Virus record (IMG/VR): IMGVR_UViG_3300043418_000114
Coordinates: 1-64,000 of that record
Direction: 5' to 3' (one strand)
DNA length: 64,000 nt
Made by a program: the position numbers and the translations under genes. The notes under the pieces are model-generated. The model saw nothing but the letters and a program-made list of their open reading frames with translations. It was not told where the DNA came from and did no database searches. Of this stretch, positions 1 to 64,000 are shown piece after piece; within the stretch, counting starts at the first letter, position 1, and every line of letters begins with the position of its first letter.

Positions 1-11
1 AGACCATTCCA

Positions 12-503
12 ATGTGGGTCTTAAAATCACATGGAGAAACCTTTTATGTTAATCATGTGGAATGCAATGTTCCATGGAGTACGAAAGAGACACCAGATAA
101 CCCAAGTACAAAAGGTAGCATCAAAGTCAAAGATGTTCTATTGACCATTGATCCAGACAACAACGCAGTATTAACCAAGCTAACTATCTTTGATAAAGTA
201 CGATTACGCAATCAAAAGATGGGCATTACTCGTATCATGTTTTTGCCACACTCTGACATTCACAAAGACTTGTTAGAGAACAAGCTAAAGCATGGACCAA
301 TGAAACGAATCACTGCACCTTGCACTACAGCATACATTGTGTGTGACTTGCTTGATAAGGCAGAGGCTACATTCGCTACATTGAAATACGATAAGTTTAG
401 AGTTTTACAACCAAATGATAGTTACTACCAACGATACGATGAAGCTGGCGACCGCATCAGTGCCGACTACTCGGATAAAGACACTCCGTATGAGTACAGT
501 TAA
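12..503 (+). CDS. hypothetical phage protein
   Basis: 163-aa ORF in the dominant orientation; no recognised domain. Confidence 0.7.
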   Translation: MWVLKSHGETFYVNHVECNVPWSTKETPDNPSTKGSIKVKDVLLTIDPDNNAVLTKLTIFDKVRLRNQKMGITRIMFLPHSDIHKDLLENKLKHGPMKRITAPCTTAYIVCDLLDKAEATFATLKYDKFRVLQPNDSYYQRYDEAGDRISADYSDKDTPYEYS

Positions 504-12546: not shown

Positions 12547-13514
12547 ACATTTTAGTTACCGGTGGCCTCGGTTTAATTGGGCACAACGTAGTTAAACGAC
12601 TGCAAGATTTAGGTCACATTGTATCCATCATGGATATTCAAACAAACTATGGCATCATTCCACAAGATGAAATTGATTACTTGATGGACGAACGTTTGAA
12701 GAAGATTCAAGATGTTGGTGGCATGTACAATTACGATATTTGTGATGCAAAACGCATGAGTACGGTATTCAACATCGAACAGCCAGAGATTGTAATTCAT
12801 ATGGCTAGTTTCCCAAGACAAAAAGTAGTTAACGCAAATCCCGCATGGGGAAGTCGCGTTATGAGTGAAGGGTTGCTCAACTTGTTGGAAGCTAGTAAGA
12901 ATTTCGAGGTACGAAAGTTCGTGTATATTAGTTCAAGTATGGTCTATGGAGACTTTAAGGATGATGTTACAGAAGATGCCATCTGTAAACCTCAAGGACA
13001 ATATGGTATTTTAAAATTAGCTGGAGAAGACCTTGTTAAAGACTATACTCGCCGTGACAACATTAGTCACACTATTATTCGCCCCTCTGCTGTTTATGGT
13101 CCACTTGACGTGGAAGACAGAGTTATTGCAAAGTTCATGCTCACAGCGTTGCGAGGTGGTACCCTTAATGTCAACGGCGCAAATGAAACTCTCGACTTCA
13201 CCTATGTTGAAGACGCCGCAGATGGAATCGTCGGTGCCGCACTAAGCGACAACACAGACAACAAGACCTACAATATCACCAAGAGTCACAGCCGTACATT
13301 ACTTGATGCCGCCAATCTCGCAGTGAAGATTGCAGGTAAAGGCACAATCAATGTGCGAGACAAAGATGCTGACTTCCCTAGTCGTGGTGCCCTAAACATT
13401 GATGCCGCACGTAGAGACTTTGGCTACGATCCTAAAGTCGATGTTGAAGAAGGCTTTCAGAAGTACTATGATTGGTTAAGCACCTCAGAGTACTGGACAA
13501 AGAAGAATGTTTGA
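12543..13514 (+). CDS. NAD-dependent nucleotide-sugar epimerase/dehydratase
   Basis: ILVTGGLGLIG, YISSSMVYG, YGILK (YxxxK), IRPSAVYGP, DFTYVED. Confidence 0.92.
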   Translation: MNILVTGGLGLIGHNVVKRLQDLGHIVSIMDIQTNYGIIPQDEIDYLMDERLKKIQDVGGMYNYDICDAKRMSTVFNIEQPEIVIHMASFPRQKVVNANPAWGSRVMSEGLLNLLEASKNFEVRKFVYISSSMVYGDFKDDVTEDAICKPQGQYGILKLAGEDLVKDYTRRDNISHTIIRPSAVYGPLDVEDRVIAKFMLTALRGGTLNVNGANETLDFTYVEDAADGIVGAALSDNTDNKTYNITKSHSRTLLDAANLAVKIAGKGTINVRDKDADFPSRGALNIDAARRDFGYDPKVDVEEGFQKYYDWLSTSEYWTKKNV

Positions 13515-13854
13515 CAAACTTTCAATACCAATTCTTCGGAAGTTACTGCCAGCTACTATTGCAAAAGATATAGTTGGCGTACAGCCGATGACACAGACTA
13601 ATCCTATCTTTCAAATGAAGGATGGCAAAGTTGCATTCAAAAACTTTGTGCTAGCGTCAAAGCAAGATGAATGTAACAATTACTCTGGTACCCATTATGC
13701 GGTGGACGTTCGCACTTTTGTCGCAGAATGGATAGAGACACAGCCAATTCATATGTGGAAGCCTGCTGATGACACAGAAGGATGCCAGGTTGTTTGTTCT
13801 CGATATATCATATGTGAAGAACTATTAACTTGGATGACACTCAAATGGGGATGA
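13507..13854 (+). CDS. small protein with capsid-like N-terminal motif and LRW-like tail
   Basis: IPILRKLLPATIAKDIVGVQPMT; ends LTWMTLKWG. Confidence 0.65.
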   Translation: MFDKLSIPILRKLLPATIAKDIVGVQPMTQTNPIFQMKDGKVAFKNFVLASKQDECNNYSGTHYAVDVRTFVAEWIETQPIHMWKPADDTEGCQVVCSRYIICEELLTWMTLKWG

Positions 13855-51217: not shown

Positions 51218-51419
51218 CGTTGACCACGATTTTCGTGTAAAGATACCCTTTAACAATGTCTATGGGATGGTAAGTGACTGGCACGAACATTGTGCTACAG
51301 CAATTGAAATGTTTGGATTGCCCGGTGACAAGTTCACGTGTAGAATTACACATTCAGACATGGAGTTTTGGTTTCGTGATGAAAAAGATGCTATAATGTT
51401 TGAACTATGTTGCGGTTAA
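51174..51419 (+). CDS. LRW-array protein
   Basis: ends FWFRDEKDAIMFELCCG. Confidence 0.7.
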   Translation: MSEQSKKSSLLGGIDVDHDFRVKIPFNNVYGMVSDWHEHCATAIEMFGLPGDKFTCRITHSDMEFWFRDEKDAIMFELCCG

Positions 51420-51823
51420 AAGCAAGAATTCGCAAATGGAAAGCCGAGCGTAAACTCAAAAAGAGTGGATACGAGTCTTGGTCACAGTATAAACGCAATC
51501 GTGATGATGCAGTTAATGCGTATGCAAATGATGTTGACGAGTTCTACACTGGTTATCCATATGTGTATGCTTGTCTAGACTATAATCATTATGCATATAG
51601 CACACTATGGGACTATGGACCAGGTGGTCGCAGGCATGGCTGGCATGACATGATAGACTGGTGCGAAGAAAAGATAAGATGGAACTATCGATGTGATGTT
51701 CATTGTGTCTGGAAGAATGTTTGGGGCAAAATGGAGTTGAATGATATCGGAGGTCATGATATAATCTATTTCGCGTTCAAGCATGAACGAGATTATGTAC
51801 TGTTTATGTTGAGGTGGTCATGA
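51407..51823 (+). CDS. LRW-array protein (long)
   Basis: ends FAFKHERDYVLFMLRWS. Confidence 0.75.
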   Translation: MLRLKARIRKWKAERKLKKSGYESWSQYKRNRDDAVNAYANDVDEFYTGYPYVYACLDYNHYAYSTLWDYGPGGRRHGWHDMIDWCEEKIRWNYRCDVHCVWKNVWGKMELNDIGGHDIIYFAFKHERDYVLFMLRWS

Positions 51824-52038
51824 AATACTACAAGGCAAAGTTGCCAGAAGCCTATGCACGAGTAAAGTGGTGCAAAGAGGTGTTCGGCCGACCGTTTCAA
51901 GACGTACCTCAAGGCCAACGTAAGTGGCAAGACATGCGATGGTATAGAAATAAGGGCTATCTCTATTTCAAGGATGAAAAAGATTACATGTGGTATCAAT
52001 TAGTTTGGAGTGAACACCATGAGCAAAATAACACATAA
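51820..52038 (+). CDS. LRW-array protein
   Basis: LYFKDEKDYMWYQLVWS. Confidence 0.75.
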   Translation: MKYYKAKLPEAYARVKWCKEVFGRPFQDVPQGQRKWQDMRWYRNKGYLYFKDEKDYMWYQLVWSEHHEQNNT

Positions 52039-52261
52039 CACAGCGCACTATCATGGTAGCCAAAAAAACATCCATGAAGTAAAATGGGACCCAAGTGAAA
52101 TTGATGGTCGTGAAATCAAACGCTGGTGCATTCAGAACTTTGGCAAGTCTGGATATCAAGATGAAATCGAATGTGCTAGGTGGCTAGAAGAATTCGACAA
52201 GCATTCAATTACACTACTAAAGGATGAAGACTTAACTCTTTTCTTGTTGAGGTGGGAATGA
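52019..52261 (+). CDS. LRW-array protein
   Basis: ends KDEDLTLFLLRWE. Confidence 0.75.
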   Translation: MSKITHNTAHYHGSQKNIHEVKWDPSEIDGREIKRWCIQNFGKSGYQDEIECARWLEEFDKHSITLLKDEDLTLFLLRWE

Positions 52262-52494
52262 AAGTTGAAATTAAGTTTGTTCCAGAGAAACGACCCTATC
52301 ATGTTGATGTTAGGTGGAAGTCTAGAAATGATTGGAATGCATTAGAAGCATACTCATGGTGCGAGAAAAACTTTGGTCACAGAAATGACAAGTATGACAA
52401 CCCTCGCTGGTATGCTAACCCACGATACTTCACTGGAGACTTTAAGTTTCGTGACAAAAAAGATGCTGAATGGTTCTTGTTGAGGTGGGCATGA
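52258..52494 (+). CDS. LRW-array protein
   Basis: ends FKFRDKKDAEWFLLRWA. Confidence 0.8.
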   Translation: MKVEIKFVPEKRPYHVDVRWKSRNDWNALEAYSWCEKNFGHRNDKYDNPRWYANPRYFTGDFKFRDKKDAEWFLLRWA

Positions 52495-52706
52495 AATTAT
52501 ACATTAATAAACACTCAGATGATGTGGGTGAGCGTCGATTGCCACAATGGTGGTCTAACTTTGTAGAGTCAGTTGGACTAACCAAATGGCCAGATGAAGT
52601 ATTACCTAACTACAATGCATCGTTTGGAATTGATGACAATGAAGATATGTATTTACTATTCAATCACGACAGCGATGCCACCTATTTCTTGTTATTATGG
52701 TCATGA
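52491..52706 (+). CDS. LRW-array protein
   Basis: ends LFNHDSDATYFLLLWS. Confidence 0.75.
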   Translation: MKLYINKHSDDVGERRLPQWWSNFVESVGLTKWPDEVLPNYNASFGIDDNEDMYLLFNHDSDATYFLLLWS

Positions 52707-52915
52707 AGTATTACGCACCAATCAGTCCATCTCACAAAAATCTATCAGAAGAATGGAATCGATTTAGTTATTTCAAGCGATTGGAATACGATGACAACTT
52801 TTGGGACTGGGTGAAAAGAGAGCAGAAAGCAACTATGGATATTCATAGTCGTCCAGAAAGATGGATTTTTAATAAGCACGAAGATTGTATGGTGTTTATA
52901 TTGAGGTGGGCATGA
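52703..52915 (+). CDS. LRW-array protein
   Basis: ends IFNKHEDCMVFILRWA. Confidence 0.75.
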   Translation: MKYYAPISPSHKNLSEEWNRFSYFKRLEYDDNFWDWVKREQKATMDIHSRPERWIFNKHEDCMVFILRWA

Positions 52916-53202
52916 CATATAGACCAGATACTAATTCACCAGATTGGGTACGCAGTAAACTACCACCTGAGCGTGACAAGCTCTATGGAGATAGACTGTA
53001 TTATGTTGAGCCTGGTTGTGAATATGGCTTCCGAGAAGATGATGGCTATGTTTGGAATCGAATAAGCTGTAGCTATTGGTTTGGTGACTGGATCGAAGCG
53101 AACGGTAGAGCAGATCAATGGCGTATCTATGGTGGTCGTCACCGTGCTATCTATATTGTACGTGAAGACTTGATGGTGTTTATACGATTGAAATTTCTTT
53201 GA
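52912..53202 (+). CDS. LRW-array protein (divergent)
   Basis: ends VREDLMVFIRLKFL. Confidence 0.7.
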   Translation: MTYRPDTNSPDWVRSKLPPERDKLYGDRLYYVEPGCEYGFREDDGYVWNRISCSYWFGDWIEANGRADQWRIYGGRHRAIYIVREDLMVFIRLKFL

Positions 53203-53203
53203 T

Positions 53204-53464
53204 ATGACAGGATTCAAAAGCAAAAAAGCCATGAGTGCAAGATTCACTTTGGTAACAGATTCAAAGTACAAATTCAGTCGCAATTGGTACAGTGCATCAT
53301 TCAATCTTAAAGATTATGATGCAGTTGATGAATGGTGTGAACAACAGTTTGGCCCTCAAGATAGGCGACCAGACTCTTGGTCACGTTGGTGGCATAAGTT
53401 TGAGACTAGTATTCTTTTTCGTGATGAAAAAGATTATATGTTATTTGTGTTAAGATGGTCGTAA
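53204..53464 (+). CDS. LRW-array protein
   Basis: ends LFRDEKDYMLFVLRWS. Confidence 0.8.
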   Translation: MTGFKSKKAMSARFTLVTDSKYKFSRNWYSASFNLKDYDAVDEWCEQQFGPQDRRPDSWSRWWHKFETSILFRDEKDYMLFVLRWS

Positions 53465-53465
53465 T

Positions 53466-53720
53466 ATGAAACCTCGCATAGAACCAGAAACAGTATCTGC
53501 TATTTACAAATCATGGCTACGAGCGTGTGGCCTTGATGGCGAGTCGCTGAGTTATTGGAGCAATGACATTCATCGAGTTAATCTAAGTTTTGGAAATCCT
53601 AAACACTTTGACGAATATGTTTGGGGTTGCGGTGGTAGAATCTACCAAGAAAATGGCAAGCGATACATTGAATTCTTTGAAGATTCGAACTTGACTATGT
53701 TTTTATTGAAGTGGCTATAA
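53466..53720 (+). CDS. LRW-array protein
   Basis: ends EFFEDSNLTMFLLKWL. Confidence 0.75.
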   Translation: MKPRIEPETVSAIYKSWLRACGLDGESLSYWSNDIHRVNLSFGNPKHFDEYVWGCGGRIYQENGKRYIEFFEDSNLTMFLLKWL

Positions 53721-53923
53721 TGGAGTATCAACGTTATCCTCAATATACTAGCAATTACACGAATGTAATTGTGAGTCAGGACTGGCGGAGCGCGATGAAA
53801 GCAGATCAAGTTGCTTGGTTGAAGAATCATCAAGGTGGAATGTATCATATTCATCGTAGTGGCACTGCTATCAAGTTTGAGCGCAAAGAAGATGCTGAAT
53901 GGTTTATCTTGAGGTTTCTATGA
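53720..53923 (+). CDS. LRW-array protein
   Basis: ends KFERKEDAEWFILRFL. Confidence 0.75.
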   Translation: MEYQRYPQYTSNYTNVIVSQDWRSAMKADQVAWLKNHQGGMYHIHRSGTAIKFERKEDAEWFILRFL

Positions 53924-54177
53924 AAGTATTGAGATACAACGCGAAATATGACAAGTCTAATGAGTCTTTTGAGACCTGGAAAAAAGTCAATAATGTCATT
54001 CAACAAAACATGACTCCTGAAATCAAAAAGCGATGGCTTATAGATGGTTATATAGGACTCAATGAATGTGCATTAGATTACTTTGGAATCAATCGTATCT
54101 ATCGTGACAACAACCAATCTACTGTATTCGAATTCACTGAGCACCAGTGGACTATGTTTGTGTTGAGGTGGCTATGA
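53920..54177 (+). CDS. LRW-array protein
   Basis: ends EFTEHQWTMFVLRWL. Confidence 0.75.
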   Translation: MKVLRYNAKYDKSNESFETWKKVNNVIQQNMTPEIKKRWLIDGYIGLNECALDYFGINRIYRDNNQSTVFEFTEHQWTMFVLRWL

Positions 54178-54446
54178 TTAGAGTAATGATATCCGACCAT
54201 GGCAATGAATCACCATACATGTGGTGGTACAAGTTTCTCGGCAGTGTTAAGCCATCCAAGTATGGCATGACGGTTGAAGCCCGTATAGATGTTATCAACA
54301 CTGAATTAATGAATTGGTCCGCACAATTATGGCAAAATGAACCAATCCCGCATGAACTGGGTACTACTGTTTCCAAATATCGTAACGTTTATCTTGACTT
54401 TTATGACGAGCAGGCGCATACTTGGTTTGTGTTGAGGTGGGCATGA
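54174..54446 (+). CDS. LRW-array protein
   Basis: ends DFYDEQAHTWFVLRWA. Confidence 0.75.
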   Translation: MIRVMISDHGNESPYMWWYKFLGSVKPSKYGMTVEARIDVINTELMNWSAQLWQNEPIPHELGTTVSKYRNVYLDFYDEQAHTWFVLRWA

Positions 54447-54652
54447 ACATAGAATTCAAATACAATCCATTTAAACAATACCCATGGAGATGGTACTATA
54501 GTCCACAGGGTGAAGAATTTGCCGAAGTTATGCTATGGTTGTATGACACATATGGTTCACCGATTCGCAATAGTAGATGGGACATCAATCGTGGCTGGAT
54601 TAGTTTTGCAGACAAAAAAGATGCTGAATGGTTTAAATTAAGATGGAGCTAG
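54443..54652 (+). CDS. LRW-array protein
   Basis: ends SFADKKDAEWFKLRWS. Confidence 0.8.
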   Translation: MNIEFKYNPFKQYPWRWYYSPQGEEFAEVMLWLYDTYGSPIRNSRWDINRGWISFADKKDAEWFKLRWS

Positions 54653-54897
54653 AACTATCTGAAGGTCGTGTAGCAGGAGCACGATATCACACAGCAAAGC
54701 CAATATTTAATATGGATGCTTTGTATGGGTTCGATGACACCACATGGAGATCAATGATTGAATGGTGCGTCAATACATATGGTTCTACTCCGTCTGACGG
54801 AGTGTGGACTCCTGGCTCACGATGGTATAGTAACAATGCTAAGTTCTGGTTCAGAGAGCGAAAAGACTTAGAGTGGTTTATCATTAGATGGCAATAA
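54643..54897 (+). CDS. LRW-array protein
   Basis: ends FWFRERKDLEWFIIRWQ. Confidence 0.8.
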   Translation: MELELSEGRVAGARYHTAKPIFNMDALYGFDDTTWRSMIEWCVNTYGSTPSDGVWTPGSRWYSNNAKFWFRERKDLEWFIIRWQ

Positions 54898-55133
54898 TAT
54901 TGCAAAATTACGATCAATCAAAAGGCTGGGAACTAACTCAGCCTGGTTGGTACGAGCATAAAATCACTATTGGTGAATCTAGTATGTCCGAAACATACGA
55001 AGAAGTATTGTATTGGTTGTATAATCGTATTGACAATTGTGAGCGCCATGCTAGATGGATAATCTCTAGGAATCTGATCAAAATCAGATTCAGGCATGAG
55101 CGTGACATAATACTATGTAGATTGAGTTTCTAA
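54888..55133 (+). CDS. LRW-array protein
   Basis: ends RFRHERDIILCRLSF. Confidence 0.7.
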   Translation: MAIILQNYDQSKGWELTQPGWYEHKITIGESSMSETYEEVLYWLYNRIDNCERHARWIISRNLIKIRFRHERDIILCRLSF

Positions 55134-55336
55134 TGACATTAGATTTGAATCCATTGCCTTATTATACAGCGATAGACATTATCAAGTGGTGCTTTGAAAA
55201 TAATGTAGACCGTGAAAAGGCAATCTTTTTGACTGAAATGATGGGCATAGTCCCTGATGATTGGCCAGCTGATTTAGAATGGACATTAGAGATTCCAGAA
55301 GCATATGCAACTTGGATAACATTGAGATTTACATGA
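55133..55336 (+). CDS. LRW-array protein (divergent)
   Basis: ends IPEAYATWITLRFT. Confidence 0.7.
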   Translation: MTLDLNPLPYYTAIDIIKWCFENNVDREKAIFLTEMMGIVPDDWPADLEWTLEIPEAYATWITLRFT

Positions 55337-55533
55337 TAAAGAGACAATATAACAGAGGACAACCTGGTTATTTTAATAACTTCATTTTATCGCATGACCC
55401 AGAAGGCACGATAGAAGAAGAATTAAAATTATACAAGGCTACTATAGCAAAAAGTAAAAACAAACATTACAGAATGAATGTAAAGTGGTATGACCACGAA
55501 CTATATGTAATTTTTGTATTGAGGTATTCATGA
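55333..55533 (+). CDS. LRW-array protein
   Basis: ends WYDHELYVIFVLRYS. Confidence 0.7.
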   Translation: MIKRQYNRGQPGYFNNFILSHDPEGTIEEELKLYKATIAKSKNKHYRMNVKWYDHELYVIFVLRYS

Positions 55534-55709
55534 CAACGATTACTATTCTTTGTCGTGTTACCTGGTGGGAACAATGTCAATGGATATATAAAAATTGCAC
55601 CGACGCTGTAGATAGAACAGACTGGGGATTGTGGCAATTAGGACAAAGTGATATTCACTTTGATTTAGATGAAAAAGACGCCGTATGGTTTAACTTAATG
55701 TGGGTATGA
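55530..55709 (+). CDS. LRW-array protein (59 aa, missed by ORF track)
   Basis: manual translation ends FDLDEKDAVWFNLMWV. Confidence 0.7.
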   Translation: MTTITILCRVTWWEQCQWIYKNCTDAVDRTDWGLWQLGQSDIHFDLDEKDAVWFNLMWV

Positions 55710-56134
55710 ATATGACTGACAATGAATTGATTGATTACACTATTAAATTTGACAACGACCCTGTTCGTGTCAGACTTGCCACGTACATGGAGCGTCATCC
55801 AGGTGCCATTCTAGATGACCTTGAACGAGCAGGCATGGACGAAACGTGGTGCACCTTTCGTAGTGTCGTAACATGCACTGAATATCTTCCCGGTCAATAC
55901 ATCAGTCACCTTGAAAATGAAATTGAGTACTTACAAGAACAACTAAAGCAAGCACATGATGAAATTGAAGAAATGAAACCAATGAAGGTCAGTGATTTGA
56001 TTTCTCAATTGCGTGAAGCAATCACTACAGAGAAACATAGCAGAGAACGAGCAGAAAACAAGCGTTGGCAAGCAGAAAAAGAGCGTGAAGATATGAAAAA
56101 CAAGCTCGACATGTGGGCGATATTGAATCGATGA
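55706..56134 (+). CDS. coiled-coil hypothetical protein interrupting the array
   Basis: no LRW tail; long helical C-terminus. Confidence 0.7.
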   Translation: MNMTDNELIDYTIKFDNDPVRVRLATYMERHPGAILDDLERAGMDETWCTFRSVVTCTEYLPGQYISHLENEIEYLQEQLKQAHDEIEEMKPMKVSDLISQLREAITTEKHSRERAENKRWQAEKEREDMKNKLDMWAILNR

Positions 56135-56355
56135 ACATCAAGGTAAAAGAGCTAATGCGTGAATGGTTCGAAGAAGAAGAACTCAATAATAAGTACTGGC
56201 CCTATCAGTATGCAGTCAAAGACTGGCAACATATCCATATGGTTGAACGATTCTGTTATGGCAATTTCAAAAGCAAGAACTGGCGCAATCGTGGCAGATA
56301 CTTTGGATTCAAACGCAAACAAGACTATGAGTGGTTCTTACTGAGATGGCTATGA
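56131..56355 (+). CDS. LRW-array protein
   Basis: ends FGFKRKQDYEWFLLRWL. Confidence 0.8.
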   Translation: MNIKVKELMREWFEEEELNNKYWPYQYAVKDWQHIHMVERFCYGNFKSKNWRNRGRYFGFKRKQDYEWFLLRWL

Positions 56356-56537
56356 AGCAGTATGGTCTTGCTATCGAACGTTGGACTTGGCAACACAAGC
56401 GCGAAGTTAAAATGTGGCTTGTTGAAAACTTTGGAGTCAATGGAGGTCGCTGGGGCGAACAGCCAGACTATGGTTTAGAAAATCTTTGGATGGACGAAGA
56501 TGTTTATATGATGTACTTACTGCGATGGCAAAGTTAA
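56352..56537 (+). CDS. LRW-array protein
   Basis: ends MDEDVYMMYLLRWQS. Confidence 0.75.
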   Translation: MKQYGLAIERWTWQHKREVKMWLVENFGVNGGRWGEQPDYGLENLWMDEDVYMMYLLRWQS

Positions 56538-56773
56538 AATCATTCAAGGGCAATCTGATGACTCACAAACATCGAGGTCATCGTTGGACTGTGAGAGTCG
56601 CTGGCAAAATCGATGATGAAGTTTTCAACTGGTTAAGTGATAACTGGGGTGAAGAAGATTTTGAAAATGGTCCCTGGGCTAAAATGTATTCAGCCTGGGA
56701 TTATCATGGTCACGCCACTTATGATGTGACTGATCCTAAGATTATTACTATGATGAAATTGAGGTTTGAATAA
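56525..56773 (+). CDS. LRW-array protein
   Basis: ends VTDPKIITMMKLRFE. Confidence 0.7.
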   Translation: MAKLKSFKGNLMTHKHRGHRWTVRVAGKIDDEVFNWLSDNWGEEDFENGPWAKMYSAWDYHGHATYDVTDPKIITMMKLRFE

Positions 56774-57057
56774 TGGAATACTTTTATGGTGGGGGCGGGA
56801 ACAATCGCCCCGTTTTTACATACAGATTCAAAGTAAAAAAGTGTACTAATGAAATGTACAAGTGGGCAGAAGCATATCCTGAGAAGGGTCCTTTCAGTCG
56901 TTGGCACGTTGAGTGGGCAGGTGCTTATAGCAAAATGGACAGTCCTAGAGAATATGATGTGGTACAGTTTGAACACAGCGAAGCCGCTAAGATATTCAGA
57001 ATCGCATTCGCAGGTGAGTATGAAGATATCACCATGAAAGAATATAAACTTGATTAG
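56773..57057 (+). CDS. LRW-array protein (divergent)
   Basis: QFEHSEAAKIFRIAF plus short extension. Confidence 0.7.
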   Translation: MEYFYGGGGNNRPVFTYRFKVKKCTNEMYKWAEAYPEKGPFSRWHVEWAGAYSKMDSPREYDVVQFEHSEAAKIFRIAFAGEYEDITMKEYKLD

Positions 57058-57268
57058 TGTTAGGATTGAGCGAGATAAACCCGACGAGATAATGGAACTC
57101 GTTAGAGACCTACGTAAGAGAGGGTACGCACAGGGAATAGACTTTGACTTTAAGTTTATACCGGCTGAGATTGACCATAAAAGCTATCAAGTTATTAACA
57201 AAAAGCATACAATGTTTATATTCTATAAAGAGGAAATTGCCACATGGTTCACGCTACTATATCAATAG
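57050..57268 (+). CDS. LRW-array protein
   Basis: TTG start; ends FYKEEIATWFTLLYQ. Confidence 0.65.
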   Translation: MISVRIERDKPDEIMELVRDLRKRGYAQGIDFDFKFIPAEIDHKSYQVINKKHTMFIFYKEEIATWFTLLYQ

Positions 57269-57528
57269 AACAAACACAACATCCAGATTTAGAAGATGAA
57301 CTGGCTAAGATTTTACAGGAAGAAATCGACTGGGAAATCTTAGCTGGTATGTTCGTAAAGATGGGTTGGATCATGATTGACTTGCCACGATTCCATGATA
57401 GATACGAAGCGGTTGATGTTGAATTGTGGATCGATGAAAATTGTAGTGGCAAACACATGAAGCGAGGCAAGACGTTTGTGTTTGAAAATAAACAAGACGC
57501 TGAATGGTTTAGTCTACGATGGCTATAA
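57244..57528 (+). CDS. LRW-array protein
   Basis: ends FENKQDAEWFSLRWL. Confidence 0.75.
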   Translation: MVHATISIEQTQHPDLEDELAKILQEEIDWEILAGMFVKMGWIMIDLPRFHDRYEAVDVELWIDENCSGKHMKRGKTFVFENKQDAEWFSLRWL

Positions 57529-57860
57529 AGATTGCGTGGGGCAGAAGCATAAACTTCAACATAGAGCTACACAAGGCACGTATGAGTTACAACGGCGCAA
57601 ACAAATTTAATCCTAGTCCAGGAAAGCAGTACATGGAATACACAATCATAACCGATGGTGCAGACTGCTACCCTTGGCACGAATACTTTGCTATCTTGCC
57701 ACGCAAGACAATTAGTGGCACTCGCATCTTCTGGGAGAAAGCATACAAGCGTAAAGTTTGGGTAGTATGGGGCACAGGCTTTCATATGGAACCAGAAACT
57801 CAATACGCAACTGCATTTGATTTATTAACACATGGCGATCAAAATACCTTTAAGACATGA
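57519..57860 (+). CDS. hypothetical protein interrupting the array
   Basis: WHEYFAILPRKTISGTRIFW; no LRW tail. Confidence 0.65.
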   Translation: MAIKIAWGRSINFNIELHKARMSYNGANKFNPSPGKQYMEYTIITDGADCYPWHEYFAILPRKTISGTRIFWEKAYKRKVWVVWGTGFHMEPETQYATAFDLLTHGDQNTFKT

Positions 57861-58056
57861 TACACTCACGGGTGAGCAACAGCAATGGCTTGCTCATAAC
57901 GTAGGACCACGTATGCACCATCTGCACAATAGCATTGGCGGTGAAGGCTGGCTAGCCAAGCAAGAGTGGGATCCAGAAATGGTGACTAGGCGATGGTATC
58001 TTACACTAGAAGACGATAAACTCGCCACATTTTTTACATTAAAGTTTTCATCATAA
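57832..58056 (+). CDS. LRW-array protein
   Basis: ends LEDDKLATFFTLKFSS. Confidence 0.7.
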   Translation: MAIKIPLRHDTLTGEQQQWLAHNVGPRMHHLHNSIGGEGWLAKQEWDPEMVTRRWYLTLEDDKLATFFTLKFSS

Positions 58057-58334
58057 TGGCTACAGTACCTCCCTTTCAAGATTATGACGATGACGATCCA
58101 GAGATAGAGTTTCGCAAGAAACGCTGGGACTACTGGTCGGCATTAAAGCTAGTTCGCAAAGAATACATAGAAACATTAGATCAACTAGCTGGTCAATTCG
58201 ATGCATATGATTTTGAAGATTACATAGAAGCAAACTACGGCATCAAGATGAACATTGTAGACGGTAACATCACTGATGGATATAAGATCATGGATGAAGC
58301 CAAGTACACGTTCTTTCTTTTAAAGTTTCAATAA
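58056..58334 (+). CDS. LRW-array protein
   Basis: ends IMDEAKYTFFLLKFQ. Confidence 0.75.
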   Translation: MATVPPFQDYDDDDPEIEFRKKRWDYWSALKLVRKEYIETLDQLAGQFDAYDFEDYIEANYGIKMNIVDGNITDGYKIMDEAKYTFFLLKFQ

Positions 58335-58591
58335 TGACATTCAGACAAATAGTTGATTATAACGATGTAGATGAACCCATCACATTTAGAAAGTTCAAGA
58401 AGACGGTGCATAACGGCACTGATTGGGAAGATATGATTTTCTATGAGATAAAAGAGAAGGTCTGGGATGCTCAGTCTTGGCTAAAAGAAAAATACGGTAA
58501 CCAAGTATACTGTAAAACTTGGTGGCAAACTCATACAAGTATTTGTATGTCCGAAAAGATTTACACACATTATGCTTTAAGTGTATTATAG
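58334..58591 (+). CDS. LRW-array protein (divergent)
   Basis: ends MSEKIYTHYALSVL. Confidence 0.65.
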   Translation: MTFRQIVDYNDVDEPITFRKFKKTVHNGTDWEDMIFYEIKEKVWDAQSWLKEKYGNQVYCKTWWQTHTSICMSEKIYTHYALSVL

Positions 58592-58607
58592 CATAAAGGA
58601 ATATATT

Positions 58608-59162
58608 ATGAGTACTCATGTAATGATAGACATTGAATCACTGCACACCTCACCAGACTGTGTGATTCTTACAATTGGTGCGGTATTGTTTGATCCATGT
58701 GGACAAGGCATGATCGACAAGATTGAAATCAGACCAACAATCGACGATCAAACAGAAGTTTATGATCGTAAAATTAATGATGACACGATTGCATGGTGGG
58801 GCAGACAGTCACCAGAAGCCATCGAGGAAGCACTAGGAGACCGAGACCGCGTTTCTTTTCCAGAAGCAATGGCGCAGTTACACAAGTTCTGCTGGAATCG
58901 TGCTAAGAGTCCCTGGAGCAACGGAGCAACATTCGACATTATCGTAATGGAGAATGCATTTCGTCAACTAGGCATGGTACCACCATGGAACTTCTGGGAT
59001 ATTCGTGACACGCGCACATTGTATGATGTTACTGGCGTTAAATTAAAAGACGGCGGACACGTTACTAGTCACAAAGCGGTAGAAGATGCAGAGCGCCAAG
59101 CAATTGTTGTACAACAAGGCTACATGAAATTAATGAAAGCAGGATTGGTCGCGCCGCGATGA
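58608..59162 (+). CDS. DEDDh 3'-5' exonuclease (DexA/Rv2179c-like)
   Basis: VMIDIESL, WSNGATFD, RDTRT, HKAVEDA. Confidence 0.88.
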   Translation: MSTHVMIDIESLHTSPDCVILTIGAVLFDPCGQGMIDKIEIRPTIDDQTEVYDRKINDDTIAWWGRQSPEAIEEALGDRDRVSFPEAMAQLHKFCWNRAKSPWSNGATFDIIVMENAFRQLGMVPPWNFWDIRDTRTLYDVTGVKLKDGGHVTSHKAVEDAERQAIVVQQGYMKLMKAGLVAPR

Positions 59163-59365
59163 TTAAAATCACAAAGCACCCACTTGAACGCAGAAGCTAT
59201 ATGCTCACTGCTGACGAAGATAAGACAACCAACCGCGAAGACTGGAAAGAACTTCAATCTTGGCTTAATGCGAACGCTAGTGGCTGGGTGCTTAACAGTG
59301 GCATACTAACTTTACCTAAAGAGTTGCCATCTATTGAAACATATTTTACACTGAGATTCGGATGA
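59159..59365 (+). CDS. LRW-array-like protein
   Basis: ends PSIETYFTLRFG. Confidence 0.65.
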   Translation: MIKITKHPLERRSYMLTADEDKTTNREDWKELQSWLNANASGWVLNSGILTLPKELPSIETYFTLRFG

Positions 59366-59568
59366 ACACCGCAGAGAACACTTGGAGACAAGTCGCAGGA
59401 CTTAAACCTATTCAATCCTGGAAGTGTCGTTTCGGCTGGCATCGATGGACCAGTTATGAAATAATTGAACGCAATGAATGGGGCGGTGTATACGCAAAAT
59501 GTAGTTGTGCCGATTGTGGATTACCTAGAGTAGAACAGCCATATACTTCACGTAAAGAGAAAAAATGA
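59362..59568 (+). CDS. small Cys/His protein
   Basis: CRFGWHRW...CSCADCG. Confidence 0.65.
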   Translation: MNTAENTWRQVAGLKPIQSWKCRFGWHRWTSYEIIERNEWGGVYAKCSCADCGLPRVEQPYTSRKEKK

Positions 59569-60137
59569 GAATTGATTCAGACATTGATATTGACTTTGGC
59601 AATAGAGAAGGCATTTTGCAACACATTACCCACGTTCGTGCGGCAATGCACAGTGTTAAGCCCTATAGACCACATAACACAGGCGTATATGTAACAGATG
59701 TGCCATATGACCCTATCAACAATATCTGTGCAATTGATTATAACGAGGCAGAAAAGCGAGGCTACTTTAAACTCGACTTTCTGAACGTACACGTTTATGA
59801 GAATGTCAGGGATGAAAAACATTTGATTGAGTTAATGAAAGATCCAGATTGGTCTAAGTTAAATGATCAATCATTCGTGGAGAAACTCATTCACTTGAAC
59901 AATCATTTCGCAACTATGAAAAAGATGCCAGAGCCAATTGATAGCATTCCACGACTGGCAATGTTTTTGGCCTTGATTCGTCCTGGCAAAAAGCATCTAG
60001 TCGGTAAGAAGTGGTACGAAGTTGGCCGAGAAGTATGGGACAAAGGCACTGACGGATATACATTCAAACAGGCACACGCAATTGCCTACGCACATTTAGT
60101 GGTAGTGCATATGAACTTATTAGGAGAAACAAAATGA
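59565..60137 (+). CDS. miniature DnaE-like (C-family polymerase catalytic core) protein
   Basis: SDIDIDF, HNTGVYV, GYFKLDFLNV, LALIRPG, YTFKQAHAIAYA. Confidence 0.75.
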   Translation: MRIDSDIDIDFGNREGILQHITHVRAAMHSVKPYRPHNTGVYVTDVPYDPINNICAIDYNEAEKRGYFKLDFLNVHVYENVRDEKHLIELMKDPDWSKLNDQSFVEKLIHLNNHFATMKKMPEPIDSIPRLAMFLALIRPGKKHLVGKKWYEVGREVWDKGTDGYTFKQAHAIAYAHLVVVHMNLLGETK

Positions 60138-60355
60138 ACTCAGCGGATATGGCAATGAATTTAATTCATCGTGCTAAGAACTTACAGGAATTTACAATCG
60201 AAGTTGATGTGCCAGATAACTTTAGATTTAACGGATTGATTCCGTTTGATATGACTATTGAGAATAACGTCATGTCGGCCAAAGTATATGGCTTGACGTT
60301 TGAAGAAGCTCTTGCTACTTTTGACAAGTACTTGTCAGAAAATACAGATTTCTAA
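60134..60355 (+). CDS. hypothetical protein
   Basis: AGGAG RBS; 73 aa. Confidence 0.7.
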   Translation: MNSADMAMNLIHRAKNLQEFTIEVDVPDNFRFNGLIPFDMTIENNVMSAKVYGLTFEEALATFDKYLSENTDF

Positions 60356-60732
60356 GGCATTTTGCGTACAAGCGTAATACTCTTACGCTTGCTTCTACGC
60401 TTATTAAGCTCGGCCATGCTACAAATTGGACCATGAACAACAACAAGACTTTTATTGTTGAACGTTCGCAGATAGGGCTTGAAAATAGCCCATTCTTCTT
60501 TCAGAAACAGATTGATAGGTATCAGTCTATTGCTTTCCCACCACCAAACATCGCCTAATTCAAGGAACTTTTCCTTAACAACAGGATCAATGATAGATCC
60601 ATAGTCATATATAGTCGTGACCATGTCATCACGATTCTGCACGATGCCGACGTAATCTTGGTTGGCATATGAGCAAACAGTGATGAAAGGGTGATTTTCT
60701 GTTAATTTCTGAAAAAATTCGTTATGAATCAT
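60352..60732 (-). CDS. hypothetical late protein
   Basis: 126 aa on minus strand with TAAATA upstream. Confidence 0.75.
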   Translation of the reverse strand: MIHNEFFQKLTENHPFITVCSYANQDYVGIVQNRDDMVTTIYDYGSIIDPVVKEKFLELGDVWWWESNRLIPINLFLKEEWAIFKPYLRTFNNKSLVVVHGPICSMAELNKRRSKRKSITLVRKMP

Positions 60733-61645: not shown

Positions 61646-62623
61646 ATGTTTGATATACTATCAATAATACCCGGCAAGAAAAAGCACACTTCTAGCGGAT
61701 GGACGAGTTTTAATGCCATCTGCTGTAGTCACTTTGGCCATAAATCCGATCGTAGAATGCGGGGCGGTATTAAGTTCGATGGTCAACACAATTGGTCGTT
61801 TCATTGCTTTAACTGCGGGTTCAAGTGCAACTTTACACTGGGTCGTACTATTAGTACGAAGACCAGACAATTATTGTCATGGTGTGGCATTGACGAACTA
61901 GAAATCCAACGCTGGAATCTAGAGAGTCTACAACACAAAGACCTATTAGATTTCATTCAACCAAAGAAGCGCAAAAAGATCAAGTTCACTGAGCATCAAT
62001 TGCCAATGGGTGAACTAGTTGACAAAAACAACTCACAGCACAAAGTATACGTAGACTATCTCGCCTCTAGGAAGATAGATAGTAGTGATTATCCCTTCTT
62101 AATCACCCCGAATGAGCGGGGCAGAATGAATTCACGTGTCGTCATCCCTTATACATACAAGGGAAAGATTGTAGGACACACATCTAGATTCTTAGACAAC
62201 AAAGTACCAAAGTATATCAACGAACAACAGCCTGGCTATGTCTTTAACATTGACATGCAAAAGGATGAATGGCAAGTTTGCATACTCACCGAGGGTATTT
62301 TTGATGCATTGGCAATCGACGGTGTTGCAGTCATGCACGACGACATAAGCAATGAACAAGCCGAATTACTATCAACCTTAAATCGTCAAATCATCGTAGT
62401 ACCAGATCGAGACAAAACTGGCATGAAGATGATAGACAGAGCGTTGGCGCTGGGATATCAAGTTAGTCTGCCTGATTGGGATGCAGGAGTCAAAGACGTT
62501 AATGATGCAGTGGTCAAGTACGGCAAGATCCAGACCATTTTGAGTATCTTGCAGACAGCTACAAATAGTAAAATAAAGATAGAATTACAGAGGAAGAAAA
62601 TTGGCAAACAAAACGGCTTCTAA
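61646..62623 (+). CDS. DNA primase (gp61-like)
   Basis: zinc-binding NAICC..HCFNCG; TOPRIM LTEGIFDA, VPDRDKTG, KDVND. Confidence 0.9.
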   Translation: MFDILSIIPGKKKHTSSGWTSFNAICCSHFGHKSDRRMRGGIKFDGQHNWSFHCFNCGFKCNFTLGRTISTKTRQLLSWCGIDELEIQRWNLESLQHKDLLDFIQPKKRKKIKFTEHQLPMGELVDKNNSQHKVYVDYLASRKIDSSDYPFLITPNERGRMNSRVVIPYTYKGKIVGHTSRFLDNKVPKYINEQQPGYVFNIDMQKDEWQVCILTEGIFDALAIDGVAVMHDDISNEQAELLSTLNRQIIVVPDRDKTGMKMIDRALALGYQVSLPDWDAGVKDVNDAVVKYGKIQTILSILQTATNSKIKIELQRKKIGKQNGF

Positions 62624-64000
62624 GCAACAAATTGATTATAACAAACCAGAGATTCAAAAATTATTTTTAGAAATGATGCTATCTAACGCGGAATTATATA
62701 CCCGTGTTATGAACATCATGAACAGTGAAAACTTCGACAAGACCTTACGTCCTGTCGCAGAAATGTTCAAGTCTCATACTGACAAATATAACGTATTGCC
62801 TGATCCAGTGCAGATCAAAGCAATGACTGGCGTTGAAGTTAATCCAGTGCCTGGCATGAATGAAGGACACGACGAGTGGTTTCTTGATGCGTTTGAAGCA
62901 TTCACCAAGCGACAAGAATTAGAACGTGCGATCCTTAAAGCCGCTGATATGCTTGAGAAAGGTGACTATGATCCAGTTGAGAAACTAATCAAAGACGCAG
63001 TTCAAATCAGTCTACAGAAAGACATGGGTACCGATTATTTCGCTGACCCACAGGCTCGTATCAACAAATACTTTAACGCTGGTGGCCAAGTCTCTACCGG
63101 CTGGCCACAGATGGATAAGATTCTCTATGGTGGCATGTCACGTGGTGAATTGAATATCTTTGCAGGTGGCTCGGGTTCAGGTAAGTCACTGGTTATGATG
63201 AACTTAGCCCTAAACTGGTTAGGCGTAGGCATGAGCGGTGTGTATATCTCACTTGAATTGAGTGAAGAATTAACATCCCTGCGTACCGATGCGATGGCGA
63301 CAAGCATGGGCACTAAAGAGATTCGCAAGAATATCGACGATGCTCACTTGAAAGTCAAGATGCTTGCTAAGAAGTCTGGCCAGTATCGTGTTAAGGCGTT
63401 GCCTGCTCAATCGACAGTTAACGACATTCGTTCATACTTGAAAGAAGTTCAAATTCAAACTGGTATTCGTGTTGACTTTGTGATGGTCGACTACCTTGAC
63501 TTGGTGATGCCAGTATCTGTTAAAGTTAACCCTAACGATCAGTTTATCAAAGACAAGTATGTTGCGGAAGAATTGCGTAACTTGGCCAAAGAGATGGGAA
63601 TCTTGTTAGTCACTGCATCACAGTTGAACCGTAGTGCTGTTGATGAACTTGAGTTTGATCACAGTCACATTGCTGGTGGTATCTCAAAGATTAACACAGC
63701 GGATAACGTGTTTGGTATCTTTACTAACCGAAGTATGCGTGAACGTGGCAAATACCAGATACAATGTATGAAGTCTCGTAGTTCGACTGGTGTAGGTCAG
63801 AAGATTGACCTAGATTATAATATCGAAACTATGCGTATTACAGATGAAGATCCTGATGGATATGCTGACCAACAAGCAAAGTATAGACCAGCGTCAAGTC
63901 CTAATGATATAATGAGCAAATTCAAGACTCAATCTACTGTGACTGCCACTGAACCTATCATTGATCAGTCTACGGGTGAAATTTTAGAACCAGTTCAAAA
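62601..64000 (+). CDS. replicative DnaB-like helicase (gp41-like), runs off window end
   Basis: manual translation from TTG 62601: STGWPQMD, AGGSGSGKS, ISLELSE, VDYLDL, TASQLNR, DHSHIAGG. Confidence 0.92.
   Translation, partial: MANKTASKQQIDYNKPEIQKLFLEMMLSNAELYTRVMNIMNSENFDKTLRPVAEMFKSHTDKYNVLPDPVQIKAMTGVEVNPVPGMNEGHDEWFLDAFEAFTKRQELERAILKAADMLEKGDYDPVEKLIKDAVQISLQKDMGTDYFADPQARINKYFNAGGQVSTGWPQMDKILYGGMSRGELNIFAGGSGSGKSLVMMNLALNWLGVGMSGVYISLELSEELTSLRTDAMATSMGTKEIRKNIDDAHLKVKMLAKKSGQYRVKALPAQSTVNDIRSYLKEVQIQTGIRVDFVMVDYLDLVMPVSVKVNPNDQFIKDKYVAEELRNLAKEMGILLVTASQLNRSAVDELEFDHSHIAGGISKINTADNVFGIFTNRSMRERGKYQIQCMKSRSSTGVGQKIDLDYNIETMRITDEDPDGYADQQAKYRPASSPNDIMSKFKTQSTVTATEPIIDQSTGEILEPVQ

What the first reader, a model, noticed from the sequence alone, without database searches (positions are those of the whole stretch)
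59565..60137. A 190-aa minimal DnaE-like polymerase core near a standalone proofreading exonuclease
Seen: DIDIDF, HNTGV, KLDFL and YTFKQAHAIAY occur in the order of the palm and fingers motifs of bacterial DnaE (DFDVDF, HAGG, KFDFLGL, YGFNKSHSAAY). All three catalytic Asp positions are apparently kept, in an intact ORF with a proper start overlap and stop. Established: DnaE is normally over 1000 aa with PHP, clamp-binding, HhH and OB domains, all missing here. A DEDDh exonuclease lies 400 bp upstream, and primase and helicase lie downstream. Inference: a stripped nucleotidyltransferase, one piece of a split polymerase, or a repurposed enzyme.
Basis: partly seen in the sequence, partly recalled or inferred. 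Interest (0 to 1): 0.7.

Follow-up and report, generated by a model that had tools for sequence, protein, structure and literature searches.

The report
Half of a split mini-polymerase
This 190-residue gene of a freshwater jumbo phage is the metal-binding, DNA-contacting half of a stripped-down, two-piece relative of the bacterial replicative polymerase DnaE, a family described by sequence analysis in 2021 but, in the literature I could search, not yet tested at the bench.

Summary
Window 59565-60137 (+) is an intact 190-aa ORF carrying the DnaE palm and fingers motifs in the right order.

- **Fold.** Its AlphaFold model (pLDDT 94.7) matches only C-family polymerases among solved structures (E. 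coli alpha 397-780, Z 8.4; the first unrelated chain has Z 2.5).
- **Conservation.** D6, D8 and D71 (E. coli D401, D403, D555) are invariant in 51 diverse homologues. dN/dS is about 0.05.
- **It is only half an enzyme.** The other half of the palm, with the GRGS nucleotide-binding loop, is a separate 169-aa ORF 41 kb away (genome 100539-101048).
- **The halves belong together.** A complex model scores 0.89 against a best control of 0.27. Three rare metagenomic proteins carry both halves fused in one chain, joined exactly at the split point; that fused form matches DnaE1 at Z 21.4.
- **Rest of the genome.** No PHP, thumb, clamp-binding or OB parts were found. A T4-like family B polymerase is present.
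- **Already published.** This is the "minimal, split DNA polymerase III alpha" of group 2.2 jumbo phages (Iyer et al. 2021, PMC7824862). It is a new member of a known kind.
- **Exonuclease.** The neighbouring exonuclease is not a conserved partner.

Activity and role remain untested.

The parts
59565..60137 (+). C-terminal subunit (190 aa) of the split minimal Pol III alpha: the second half of the palm plus truncated fingers
   Evidence: phrog_11778 E = 4e-56. AlphaFold pLDDT 94.7. Only C-family polymerases match. dN/dS about 0.05.
59580..59597 (+). DIDIDF strand. D6 and D8 equal the E. coli catalytic D401 and D403; D10 equals D405.
   Evidence: Invariant in 51 homologues of 31-92% identity. 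Motif positions. Touches the GRGS loop of the N subunit in the complex model.
59673..59684 (+). HNTG motif, equal to E. coli H511-A-G-G (palm)
   Evidence: H37 is invariant and G40 at least 90% conserved. Positions.
59769..59783 (+). KLDFL. D71 equals the third catalytic carboxylate, E. coli D555.
   Evidence: K69 and D71 are invariant. hhalign places residues 58-142 on E. coli 542-642.
59979..59990 (+). RPGK fingers motif, equal to E. coli R639-P-G-P
   Evidence: R139 and P140 are invariant. hhalign.
60057..60077 (+). YTFKQAH fingers motif, equal to E. coli Y754-GFNKSH
   Evidence: H171 is invariant and K168 at least 90% conserved. hhalign places residues 163-179 on E. coli 752-768.
61646..62623 (+). 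DnaG/Toprim-type primase, part of the conserved gene block around the C subunit
   Evidence: phrog_47 E = 2e-34; Toprim_2. The same order is seen in Phosso, the PA5oct-like phage, Erwinia and Vibrio phages.
62601..64000 (+). DnaB-like replicative helicase. It runs off the window and ends at genome position 64064.
   Evidence: phrog_19 E = 4e-69.
60352..60732 (-). Convergent 126-aa ORF of unknown function that follows the C subunit in most relatives
   Evidence: phrog_11637 E = 3e-30. A convergent ORF of similar size at the same position.
58581..59162 (+). Rv2179c-like DEDDh exonuclease. It is a neighbour, not a conserved partner.
   Evidence: PF16473 E = 5e-34. Adjacent only in close relatives. 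Not detected or distant in 5 cultured relatives.

Best explanation
The ORF encodes the C-terminal subunit of a two-subunit, minimal C-family (DnaE-like) DNA polymerase.

**What each subunit provides.** The C subunit (190 aa) supplies the beta-strands carrying the three metal-binding carboxylates (D6, D8, D71). It also supplies a truncated fingers domain with the RPG and Y-x-F-K-x-x-H motifs. A second gene 41 kb away (genome 100539-101048, 169 aa) supplies the first half of the palm, including the G-R-G-S loop. In DnaE that loop holds the triphosphate of the incoming nucleotide.

**Assembly.** The two proteins associate non-covalently, and the active site forms at their interface. Together they total 359 aa. 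They correspond to E. coli alpha residues about 275-780, minus the thumb (about 79 aa) and a fingers insert (about 89 aa). There is no PHP, clamp-binding, HhH or OB domain.

**Likely role.** The phage also has a complete T4-like family B polymerase, a clamp loader, a primase and a DnaB helicase. The mini-enzyme is therefore most likely an auxiliary polymerase doing short-range DNA synthesis (gap filling, repair or recombination-linked synthesis), not the main replicase.

**Shown here:** homology, fold, conservation of the catalytic residues, purifying selection, co-occurrence of the two halves, the existence of fused forms, and a predicted interface. **Inferred:** actual assembly, polymerase activity and biological role.
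For: - **Fold.** The C-subunit model (pLDDT 94.7) matches only Pol III alpha and PolC. The naturally fused homologue P0287 (model pLDDT 80.6) matches Mtb DnaE1 at Z 21.4 (model 77-375 on chain 303-800), Taq alpha at Z about 21, PolC at Z 20 and E. coli alpha at Z up to 15.8 (77-375 on 275-773). The best non-C-family chains are generic Pol-beta-fold transferases at Z 3.6 or less.
- **Catalytic residues.** D6, D8, D10, H37, K69, D71, R139, P140 and H171 are invariant in 51 sequences.
- **Partner.** PF07733 hits a 169-aa ORF at genome 100539-101048; it also matches phrog_11127. Its GVGRGSS loop is invariant.
- **Assembly.** The complex score is 0.89 in the median of three runs, against a best control of 0.27. 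That mark was reached by 58 of 80 solved complexes and 2 of 110 mismatched pairs. The runs share at least 94% of their contacts and the partner's pLDDT is at least 88. N-subunit residues 130-143 touch C-subunit residues 3-12.
- **Fusion.** P0287, P0391 and P0392 (375-376 aa, on separate contigs) join the two halves through a 10-residue linker exactly at the split point.
- **Co-occurrence.** All 5 cultured phage genomes searched with the N-piece profile have one N piece in its own ORF, 4-224 kb from the C piece.
- **Selection.** pN is 0.05-0.17 against a saturated pS of 0.70-0.85; dN/dS is 0.04-0.06.
- **Genome context.** A family B polymerase of 902 aa is present. No family A polymerase and no PHP, DnaE-finger or HHH_6 Pfam hits were found.
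- **Literature.** The same architecture and the same proposed role are in Iyer et al. 2021, PMC7824862, section 3.4.1.
Against: - No biochemical evidence exists, here or in the literature I could search.
- Plain profile searches against PDB sequences do not reach DnaE. Sequence-level support for the C subunit rests on weak PHROG hits (E about 3e-4) and a low-probability hhalign match. The case therefore depends on predicted structures.
- A high complex score can come from the model recognising the DnaE fold rather than from real binding (caveat).
- Without a thumb or clamp-binding region, it is unclear how the enzyme would hold DNA.
- Coverage in an RNA library is partial and could be DNA carry-over.
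Confidence: 0.85

Rival explanations
1. The 190-aa protein works alone as a stripped-down nucleotidyltransferase or polymerase.
For: It is an intact, well-folded (pLDDT 94.7), strongly conserved ORF that holds all three carboxylates.
Against: - It lacks the first half of the Pol-beta-like palm, including the GRGS nucleotide-binding loop. That half is encoded separately and co-occurs in every genome tested.
- Fused forms exist.
- A large, confident interface with the N piece covers the catalytic strand.
Confidence: 0.04
2. The two pieces are decaying remnants of a once complete DnaE gene and have no function.
For: Most DnaE domains are missing, and Pfam does not recognise the C piece.
Against: - dN/dS is about 0.05 with saturated synonymous sites.
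- There are 371 clusters at 50% identity, and at least 7,998 clusters at 90% identity, almost all about 190 aa and full length.
- The catalytic residues are invariant.
- Gene order on both sides is conserved.
Confidence: 0.01
3. The halves are joined covalently: by a split intein, as in cyanobacterial DnaE, or by a DNA or RNA rearrangement.
For: Cyanobacterial dnaE is split into distant genes and rejoined by protein trans-splicing (my own knowledge, not tested here).
Against: - The N piece ends, and the C piece begins, within a few residues of the junction seen in the fused proteins and in E. coli (about residues 393-397). That leaves no room for intein halves.
- No joints appear in the DNA or RNA contigs laid on either locus.
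Confidence: 0.02
4. The N+C pair assembles but is not a templated DNA polymerase. It would be a repurposed Pol-beta-fold transferase, for example doing untemplated tailing, primer-like synthesis, or making a nucleotide signal or counter-defence product.
For: - The thumb, clamp-binding, HhH and OB parts that hold DNA in DnaE are all missing.
- The phage already has a full family B replicase.
- The palm belongs to a superfamily rich in non-polymerase transferases (low-Z rows).
Against: - The fingers motifs shared with DnaE (RPG, Y-x-F-K-x-x-H) are invariant or nearly so.
- The structural match to C-family polymerases (Z 21) is far above the match to other transferases (Z 3.6 or less).
- Both genes sit in replication gene blocks: primase and helicase for one, clamp loader for the other.
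Confidence: 0.08

Closest known systems
Split minimal DNA polymerase III alpha of group 2.2 jumbo phages (Iyer, Anantharaman, Krishnan, Burroughs, Aravind 2021, Viruses 13:63, PMC7824862)
   Same: - Two standalone proteins encoded by distant genes: an N-terminal NTP-binding unit and a C-terminal Mg- and template-binding unit.
- No other Pol III domains.
- Accompanied by a family B polymerase, a clamp loader and a gp23-type capsid.
- The cultured relatives found here (Atu_ph07, RaK2/GAP32/CBB/121Q-like, PA5oct-like) belong to that group.
   Different: Nothing in kind. This copy comes from an uncultivated freshwater phage and is 38-49% identical to the copies in cultured phages.

Added here: rare natural fused forms, predicted structures and a predicted interface with controls, a selection test, and the finding that the exonuclease neighbour is not conserved.
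Bacterial C-family replicases DnaE and PolC (E. coli 2HNH, Taq 2HPI/3E0D, Mtb DnaE1 5LEW, Geobacillus PolC 3F2B)
   Same: The Pol-beta-like palm with the same three carboxylates, the GRGS loop, the HxxG motif, and the RPG and YGFNKSH-type fingers motifs. The structural match is Z 14-21 for N+C.
   Different: 359 aa in two chains instead of 1,100-1,450 aa in one. There is no PHP domain, no thumb, shortened fingers, and no clamp-binding, HhH, OB or tau-binding parts.
Cyanobacterial split-intein DnaE
   Same: The catalytic subunit is encoded by two genes far apart in the genome.
   Different: There the halves carry intein parts and are spliced into one full-length protein. Here there are no intein sequences, the split lies at a different place (inside the palm), and assembly must be non-covalent.
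Bacillus phage G / Clostridium phage c-st type phage DnaE (group 3.2 jumbo phages)
   Same: A phage-encoded C-family polymerase.
   Different: Those are full-length, host-like enzymes with a PHP domain, and they serve as the phage's main polymerase (Iyer et al. 2021).

Membership tests
Split minimal Pol III alpha of group 2.2 jumbo phages | A C-terminal unit with the Mg-binding aspartates and the template-binding (fingers) subdomain, as a standalone protein of about 190 aa | tested here: met
   ORF 59565-60137. Invariant D6, D8, D71, RPG and the fingers H171. The model maps to E. coli alpha 397-780.
Split minimal Pol III alpha of group 2.2 jumbo phages | A separate N-terminal NTP-binding unit encoded by a distant gene | tested here: met
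   A 169-aa ORF at genome 100539-101048, 41 kb away. PF07733 E = 1.2e-8 and phrog_11127 E = 2e-39.
Split minimal Pol III alpha of group 2.2 jumbo phages | No other Pol III alpha domains in the genome | tested here: met
   No PHP, DNA_pol3_finger or HHH_6 hits at E up to 1 in the 364-kb genome.
Split minimal Pol III alpha of group 2.2 jumbo phages | Accompanied by a family B polymerase and other group 2 hallmarks (clamp loader, gp23-type capsid) | tested here: met
   PolB of 902 aa. Clamp loader phrog_168. Gp23, E = 2.8e-99.
Split minimal Pol III alpha of group 2.2 jumbo phages | The two units reconstitute one enzyme | tested here: inconclusive
   The predicted complex scores 0.89 against a best control of 0.27, and natural fusions exist. 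This supports assembly but is not a measurement.
Canonical C-family replicase (DnaE/PolC) | A Pol-beta-like palm with three catalytic carboxylates and the GRGS loop | tested here: met
   The palm is split over two chains.
Canonical C-family replicase (DnaE/PolC) | An N-terminal PHP domain | tested here: not met
   No PF02811 hit in the genome.
Canonical C-family replicase (DnaE/PolC) | A thumb domain between the two palm segments | tested here: not met
   31 residues lie between DIDIDF and HNTG, against 110 in E. coli (401 to 511).
Canonical C-family replicase (DnaE/PolC) | Clamp-binding, HhH and OB C-terminal domains | tested here: not met
   The protein ends at the equivalent of E. coli residue about 780. 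No HHH_6 hit.
Canonical C-family replicase (DnaE/PolC) | Template-directed DNA polymerase activity | not testable with these tools
   Needs a primer-extension assay.
Split-intein DnaE | Intein halves at the split ends | tested here: not met
   The ends of the two ORFs abut the junction seen in the fused proteins, and there are no extra residues.

The most novel reading that the evidence does not exclude
The 169-aa and 190-aa pair is an active, template-directed DNA polymerase. That would make it the smallest C-family polymerase known, thumb-less and built from two chains. It would act as a dedicated second polymerase inside an otherwise T4-like family B replisome, for example in lagging-strand, gap-filling or recombination-dependent synthesis. 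As Iyer et al. proposed, it would also offer a working model of what the Pol III catalytic core looked like before it acquired its accessory domains.
Probability: 0.4. Interest if true: 0.65.

Novelty: new member of a known kind. Interest (0 to 1): 0.4.

Why it matters
The family is abundant. It has at least 7,998 clusters at 90% identity and 371 clusters at 50% identity in metagenomes, and it occurs in 96 cultured jumbo-phage records, including candidates for phage therapy such as PA5oct. I found no published experiment on it.

If active, it would define the minimal parts needed for C-family catalysis. It would show that a polymerase active site can be built across a protein-protein interface. 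It would also give a second example, besides Bacillus PolC/DnaE and eukaryotic polymerases, of a replisome that divides labour between two polymerases, here from different families.

For annotation, the C piece escapes Pfam entirely and is often labelled 'hypothetical' or even 'membrane protein'. It should be named as the C-terminal subunit of the split DnaE-like polymerase.

Tried and rejected
- **Megablast** of the 4.2-kb region against the phage records gave no match. The relatives are only reachable at the protein level.
- **Pfam** on the C piece gave nothing.
- **Profile searches against PDB sequences** with the C-piece and N-piece alignments gave no DnaE hit.
- **hhalign against a single E. 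coli DnaE sequence** gave only short, low-probability matches. I used them only to confirm motif register.
- **A combined alignment** of the fused protein with both N and C pieces failed three times. MAFFT placed the N pieces on the C half (A3, A5, A6). These alignments were discarded. The fused protein was folded with fused proteins plus C pieces only, so its first 79 residues are of low confidence.
- **A possible 'adjacent genes' intermediate.** The 200-aa ORF just upstream of the C piece in the closest standalone relative of the fused forms is unrelated to the N piece.
- **Atlas search** for the convergent 126-aa ORF, and **PHROG scans** of ten small upstream ORFs, were uninformative.
- **The exonuclease as proofreading partner** was considered and rejected for lack of conserved linkage.
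- **A split intein and a DNA rearrangement** were considered and rejected.

Full report
**What is there.** Window 59565-60137 (+) is an intact 190-aa ORF. Its ATG overlaps the stop of the upstream ORF, and its stop overlaps the ATG of the next ORF. A fifth DnaE-like motif, RPGK at 139-142, is also present. The window is the first 64 kb of a 364,247-bp jumbo-phage record. Its 'terminal repeat' is only a 127-bp identical prefix and suffix, which looks like an assembly overlap. Sequencing runs place the phage in freshwater.

**Is it more than chance?** Pfam finds nothing in the ORF. PHROGs places it in phrog_11778 'DNA polymerase' at E = 4e-56, with weak matches (E about 3e-4) to two families of long DnaE-type polymerases.

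An exhaustive search of 1.84 billion cluster representatives finds 371 clusters at E up to 0.001, and almost all are about 190 aa. The word-indexed search hit its ceiling, with 7,998 of the 8,000 scored candidates matching. Ninety-six cultured phage records, all jumbo phages, carry a full-length copy at 38-49% identity. They include Phosso, Atu_ph07, PA5oct-like phages, GAP32, CBB, 121Q-like phages and RsoM2USA.

Across 51 sequences of 31-92% identity, D6, D8, D10, H37, K69, D71, R139, P140 and H171 are invariant. Against three close relatives, synonymous sites are saturated (pS 0.70-0.85) while pN is 0.05-0.17. dN/dS is 0.04-0.06 where it can be computed. The gene is under strong purifying selection and is not a pseudogene.

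**Fold.** An AlphaFold2 model built on the 51-sequence alignment has mean pLDDT 94.7 and pTM 0.87. Foldseek against the PDB returns Pol III alpha chains as the top 11 hits (Taq, M. tuberculosis DnaE1, E. coli). Probability is 0.97-1.00 for the first six, and everything below is noise.

The second-look aligner puts the whole model (1-190) on these chains:

| Chain | Range | Z |
|---|---|---|
| Taq alpha | 459-837 | 9.4 |
| Mtb DnaE1 | 417-807 | 8.9 |
| E. coli alpha | 397-780 | 8.4 |
| PolC | 967-1299 | 7.7 |
| First unrelated chain | | 2.5 |

By motif position in the E. coli sequence:

| Phage C piece | E. coli alpha |
|---|---|
| D6 / D8 / D10 | D401 / D403 / D405 |
| H37 | H511 |
| D71 | D555 |
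| RPG 139-141 | RPG 639-641 |
| Y165-H171 | Y754-H760 |

hhalign independently aligns residues 58-142 to E. coli 542-642 and residues 163-179 to 752-768. The spacing shows what is missing. There are 31 residues in place of 110 between the first two motifs, which is the thumb. There are 26 in place of 115 between RPG and YxF, which is a fingers insert.

**It is only half of the catalytic core.** A genome-wide search with the DnaE palm model PF07733 hits one other place. It is a 169-aa ORF at genome 100539-101048, 41 kb downstream of the C piece and outside the window. It ends in VGRGSS...IDEFLK, the segment that in E. coli (GRGS 361-364 ... ERFLNPER) immediately precedes the catalytic DFDVDF. 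It belongs to phrog_11127 'DNA polymerase' (E = 2e-39). It has thousands of metagenomic relatives, many already labelled 'DNA polymerase III alpha subunit'. Its GVGRGSS loop is invariant. No PHP, DnaE-finger or HHH_6 domain is found anywhere in the genome.

**Do the halves belong together?** Four lines of evidence say yes.

1. *Co-occurrence.* tblastn finds the N piece in 72 phage records. A profile search finds exactly one N piece, in its own 169-181-aa frame, in all five cultured genomes tested, including three that tblastn missed. The distance to the C piece ranges from about 4 kb (RsoM2USA) through 29-43 kb (Erwinia, Vibrio, PA5oct-like) to 224 kb (Phosso).
2. *Natural fusion.* Three metagenomic proteins (P0287, P0391, P0392; 375-376 aa; 78-81% identical to each other; on separate contigs) carry both halves in one chain. 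A 10-residue linker joins them exactly where this phage's two ORFs end and begin.
3. *Predicted interface.* The complex model scores 0.89 (runs 0.89, 0.90, 0.89) against a best control of 0.27. That mark was reached by 58 of 80 solved complexes and 2 of 110 mismatched pairs. The runs share at least 94% of their contacts and the partner's pLDDT is at least 88. N-piece residues 130-143 (the GRGS loop) pack on C-piece residues 3-12 (the aspartate strand). This supports binding but does not show it, and the model may be recalling the DnaE fold.
4. *Whole-enzyme fold.* The model of the fused protein (pLDDT 80.6; residues 80-375 confident) gives far stronger matches than the C piece alone:

| Chain | Z |
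|---|---|
| Mtb DnaE1 (model 77-375 on chain 303-800) | 21.4 |
| Taq alpha | 20.6-21.0 |
| Geobacillus PolC | 20.0 |
| E. coli alpha (77-375 on 275-773) | up to 15.8 |
| Best other chains (generic Pol-beta-fold transferases) | 3.6 or less |

In a tree of C pieces, the three fused proteins form one tight clade (100/99). It is nested inside standalone forms: P0397, then P0393, with support 100/98 and 97/86. The standalone P0397 has an unrelated gene upstream. The simplest reading is a single secondary fusion, but the tree is rooted only at its midpoint, so the direction is not proven.

**Rejected ways of joining the halves.** There is no room for split-intein parts at the ORF ends. DNA and RNA contigs laid on both loci show no joints.

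**Genomic setting.** The C piece sits in a conserved block: small ORFs, C piece, a convergent ORF of about 120 aa (phrog_11637), a structural-type protein of 230-260 aa, primase and DnaB helicase. This order is seen here and in Phosso, the PA5oct-like phage, Erwinia and Vibrio phages and the close metagenomic relatives.

The N piece sits in another conserved block: N piece, small ORF, GroES-like protein and clamp-loader ATPase, both here and in the PA5oct-like phage. The genome also encodes a 902-aa family B polymerase (phrog_262, E = 3e-192) and a gp23-type capsid protein, but no family A polymerase.

**The exonuclease.** The ORF 403 bp upstream is a DEDDh exonuclease of the Rv2179c-like family (PF16473, E = 5e-34). 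It lies next to the C piece in this phage's close relatives. Among five cultured relatives it is found in only two, and there it lies 37 and 107 kb from the C piece. Nothing supports it as a dedicated proofreader for the mini-polymerase.

**Expression.** A freshwater metatranscriptome library contains contigs identical to the window over the exonuclease, the last 320 nt of the C-piece gene, the downstream genes and the whole N-piece gene, at roughly a fifth of the depth of the DNA run. DNA carry-over cannot be excluded, so this is only suggestive.

**What is known.** Iyer et al. 2021 (PMC7824862, sections 3.4.1 and 3.5) describe exactly this. [quoted passage not shown] They suggest it may cooperate with the family B enzyme in synthesis of one strand or in repair.

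Some GenBank records already label the two genes 'DnaE-like DNA polymerase III alpha'. I found no later paper in the held library that tests the enzyme.

**How it most likely works.**
- *Shown:* two conserved, selected proteins that together reproduce the C-family palm and a shortened fingers domain, with every catalytic and nucleotide-contacting motif kept.
- *Inferred:* they form a non-covalent heterodimer whose active site lies at the interface. The GRGS loop from one chain holds the triphosphate (the role of that loop in DnaE is from my own knowledge). The three carboxylates from the other chain bind two metal ions.
- *Inferred:* because the thumb, clamp-binding, OB and PHP parts are missing and a full family B replicase is present, it probably does short-range or auxiliary DNA synthesis, not bulk replication.

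**Verdict.** It is a new member of a family described computationally in 2021. What this analysis adds is the natural fused forms, quantitative structural and interface support with controls, the selection test, the scale of the family in metagenomes, and the negative result on the exonuclease.

Noticed in passing
window 51407-59365 (+ strand); also genome 200599-204324 (- strand): A multigene family of small ORFs (61-138 aa) all end in a conserved tail of the type D/E-x-x-D...W/F-x-x-L-R/K-W/F. There are 30 in the genome against 0.9 expected from residue shuffles (maximum 4 in 200). They lie in two tandem clusters, one running right up to the gene two places upstream of the C piece. Ten that were tested have no PHROG family. 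Two members (13507-13854 and genome 200850-201257) also hit the first 55-60 positions of the Gp23 capsid model (E = 2.6e-7 and 2e-12). Function unknown.
   Followed up: partly
window 60352-60732 (-): A convergent 126-aa ORF (phrog_11637, unknown function) follows the C piece. A convergent ORF of similar size holds the same position in Phosso, the PA5oct-like phage, Erwinia and Vibrio phages and the close metagenomic relatives. Such fixed linkage suggests a functional tie to the polymerase half. The atlas search was uninformative.
   Followed up: partly
window 59362-59568 (+): A 68-aa ORF with a Cys/His pattern (C22, H27, C48, C50, C53) has a stop that overlaps the C-piece start codon, which suggests translational coupling. 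ORFs of the same size hold this position in two close relatives (L013, L015) but not in a third (L016). No family hit.
   Followed up: no
L011:1066-2193 (P0287); L027:519-1649 (P0392): Rare natural single-chain versions of the split polymerase (375-376 aa) form one tight clade nested among standalone C pieces. They would be convenient for biochemical work.
   Followed up: yes
genome 100539-103106 (outside the window; L008:4640-7207): The N-terminal polymerase half is followed by a small ORF, a 125-aa GroES-like protein (the matching ORF is annotated 'chaperonin' in the PA5oct-like phage), a 117-aa ORF and the clamp-loader ATPase. The order N piece, small ORF, GroES-like protein, clamp loader recurs in the PA5oct-like phage.
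   Followed up: partly
alignment A1, C-terminal ends (the window protein ends at 60134): The C-terminal tails of C pieces vary. This phage's copy stops right after the last helix. Others carry 5-15 extra residues, some ending in hydrophobic or aromatic residues (for example ...PFKLFS in the PA5oct-like phage) that resemble clamp-binding peptides. Not tested.
   Followed up: no
window 59276-59816: In the metatranscriptome library X3 the contigs leave a gap over the two small ORFs and the first 250 nt of the C-piece gene, while the flanking genes are covered. Contig data cannot show absence.
   Followed up: no
genome ends (window 1-127 and genome 364121-364247): The record's 'direct terminal repeat' is only a 127-bp identical prefix and suffix. 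That is typical of a circular assembly overlap and does not look like a physical terminal repeat.
   Followed up: yes
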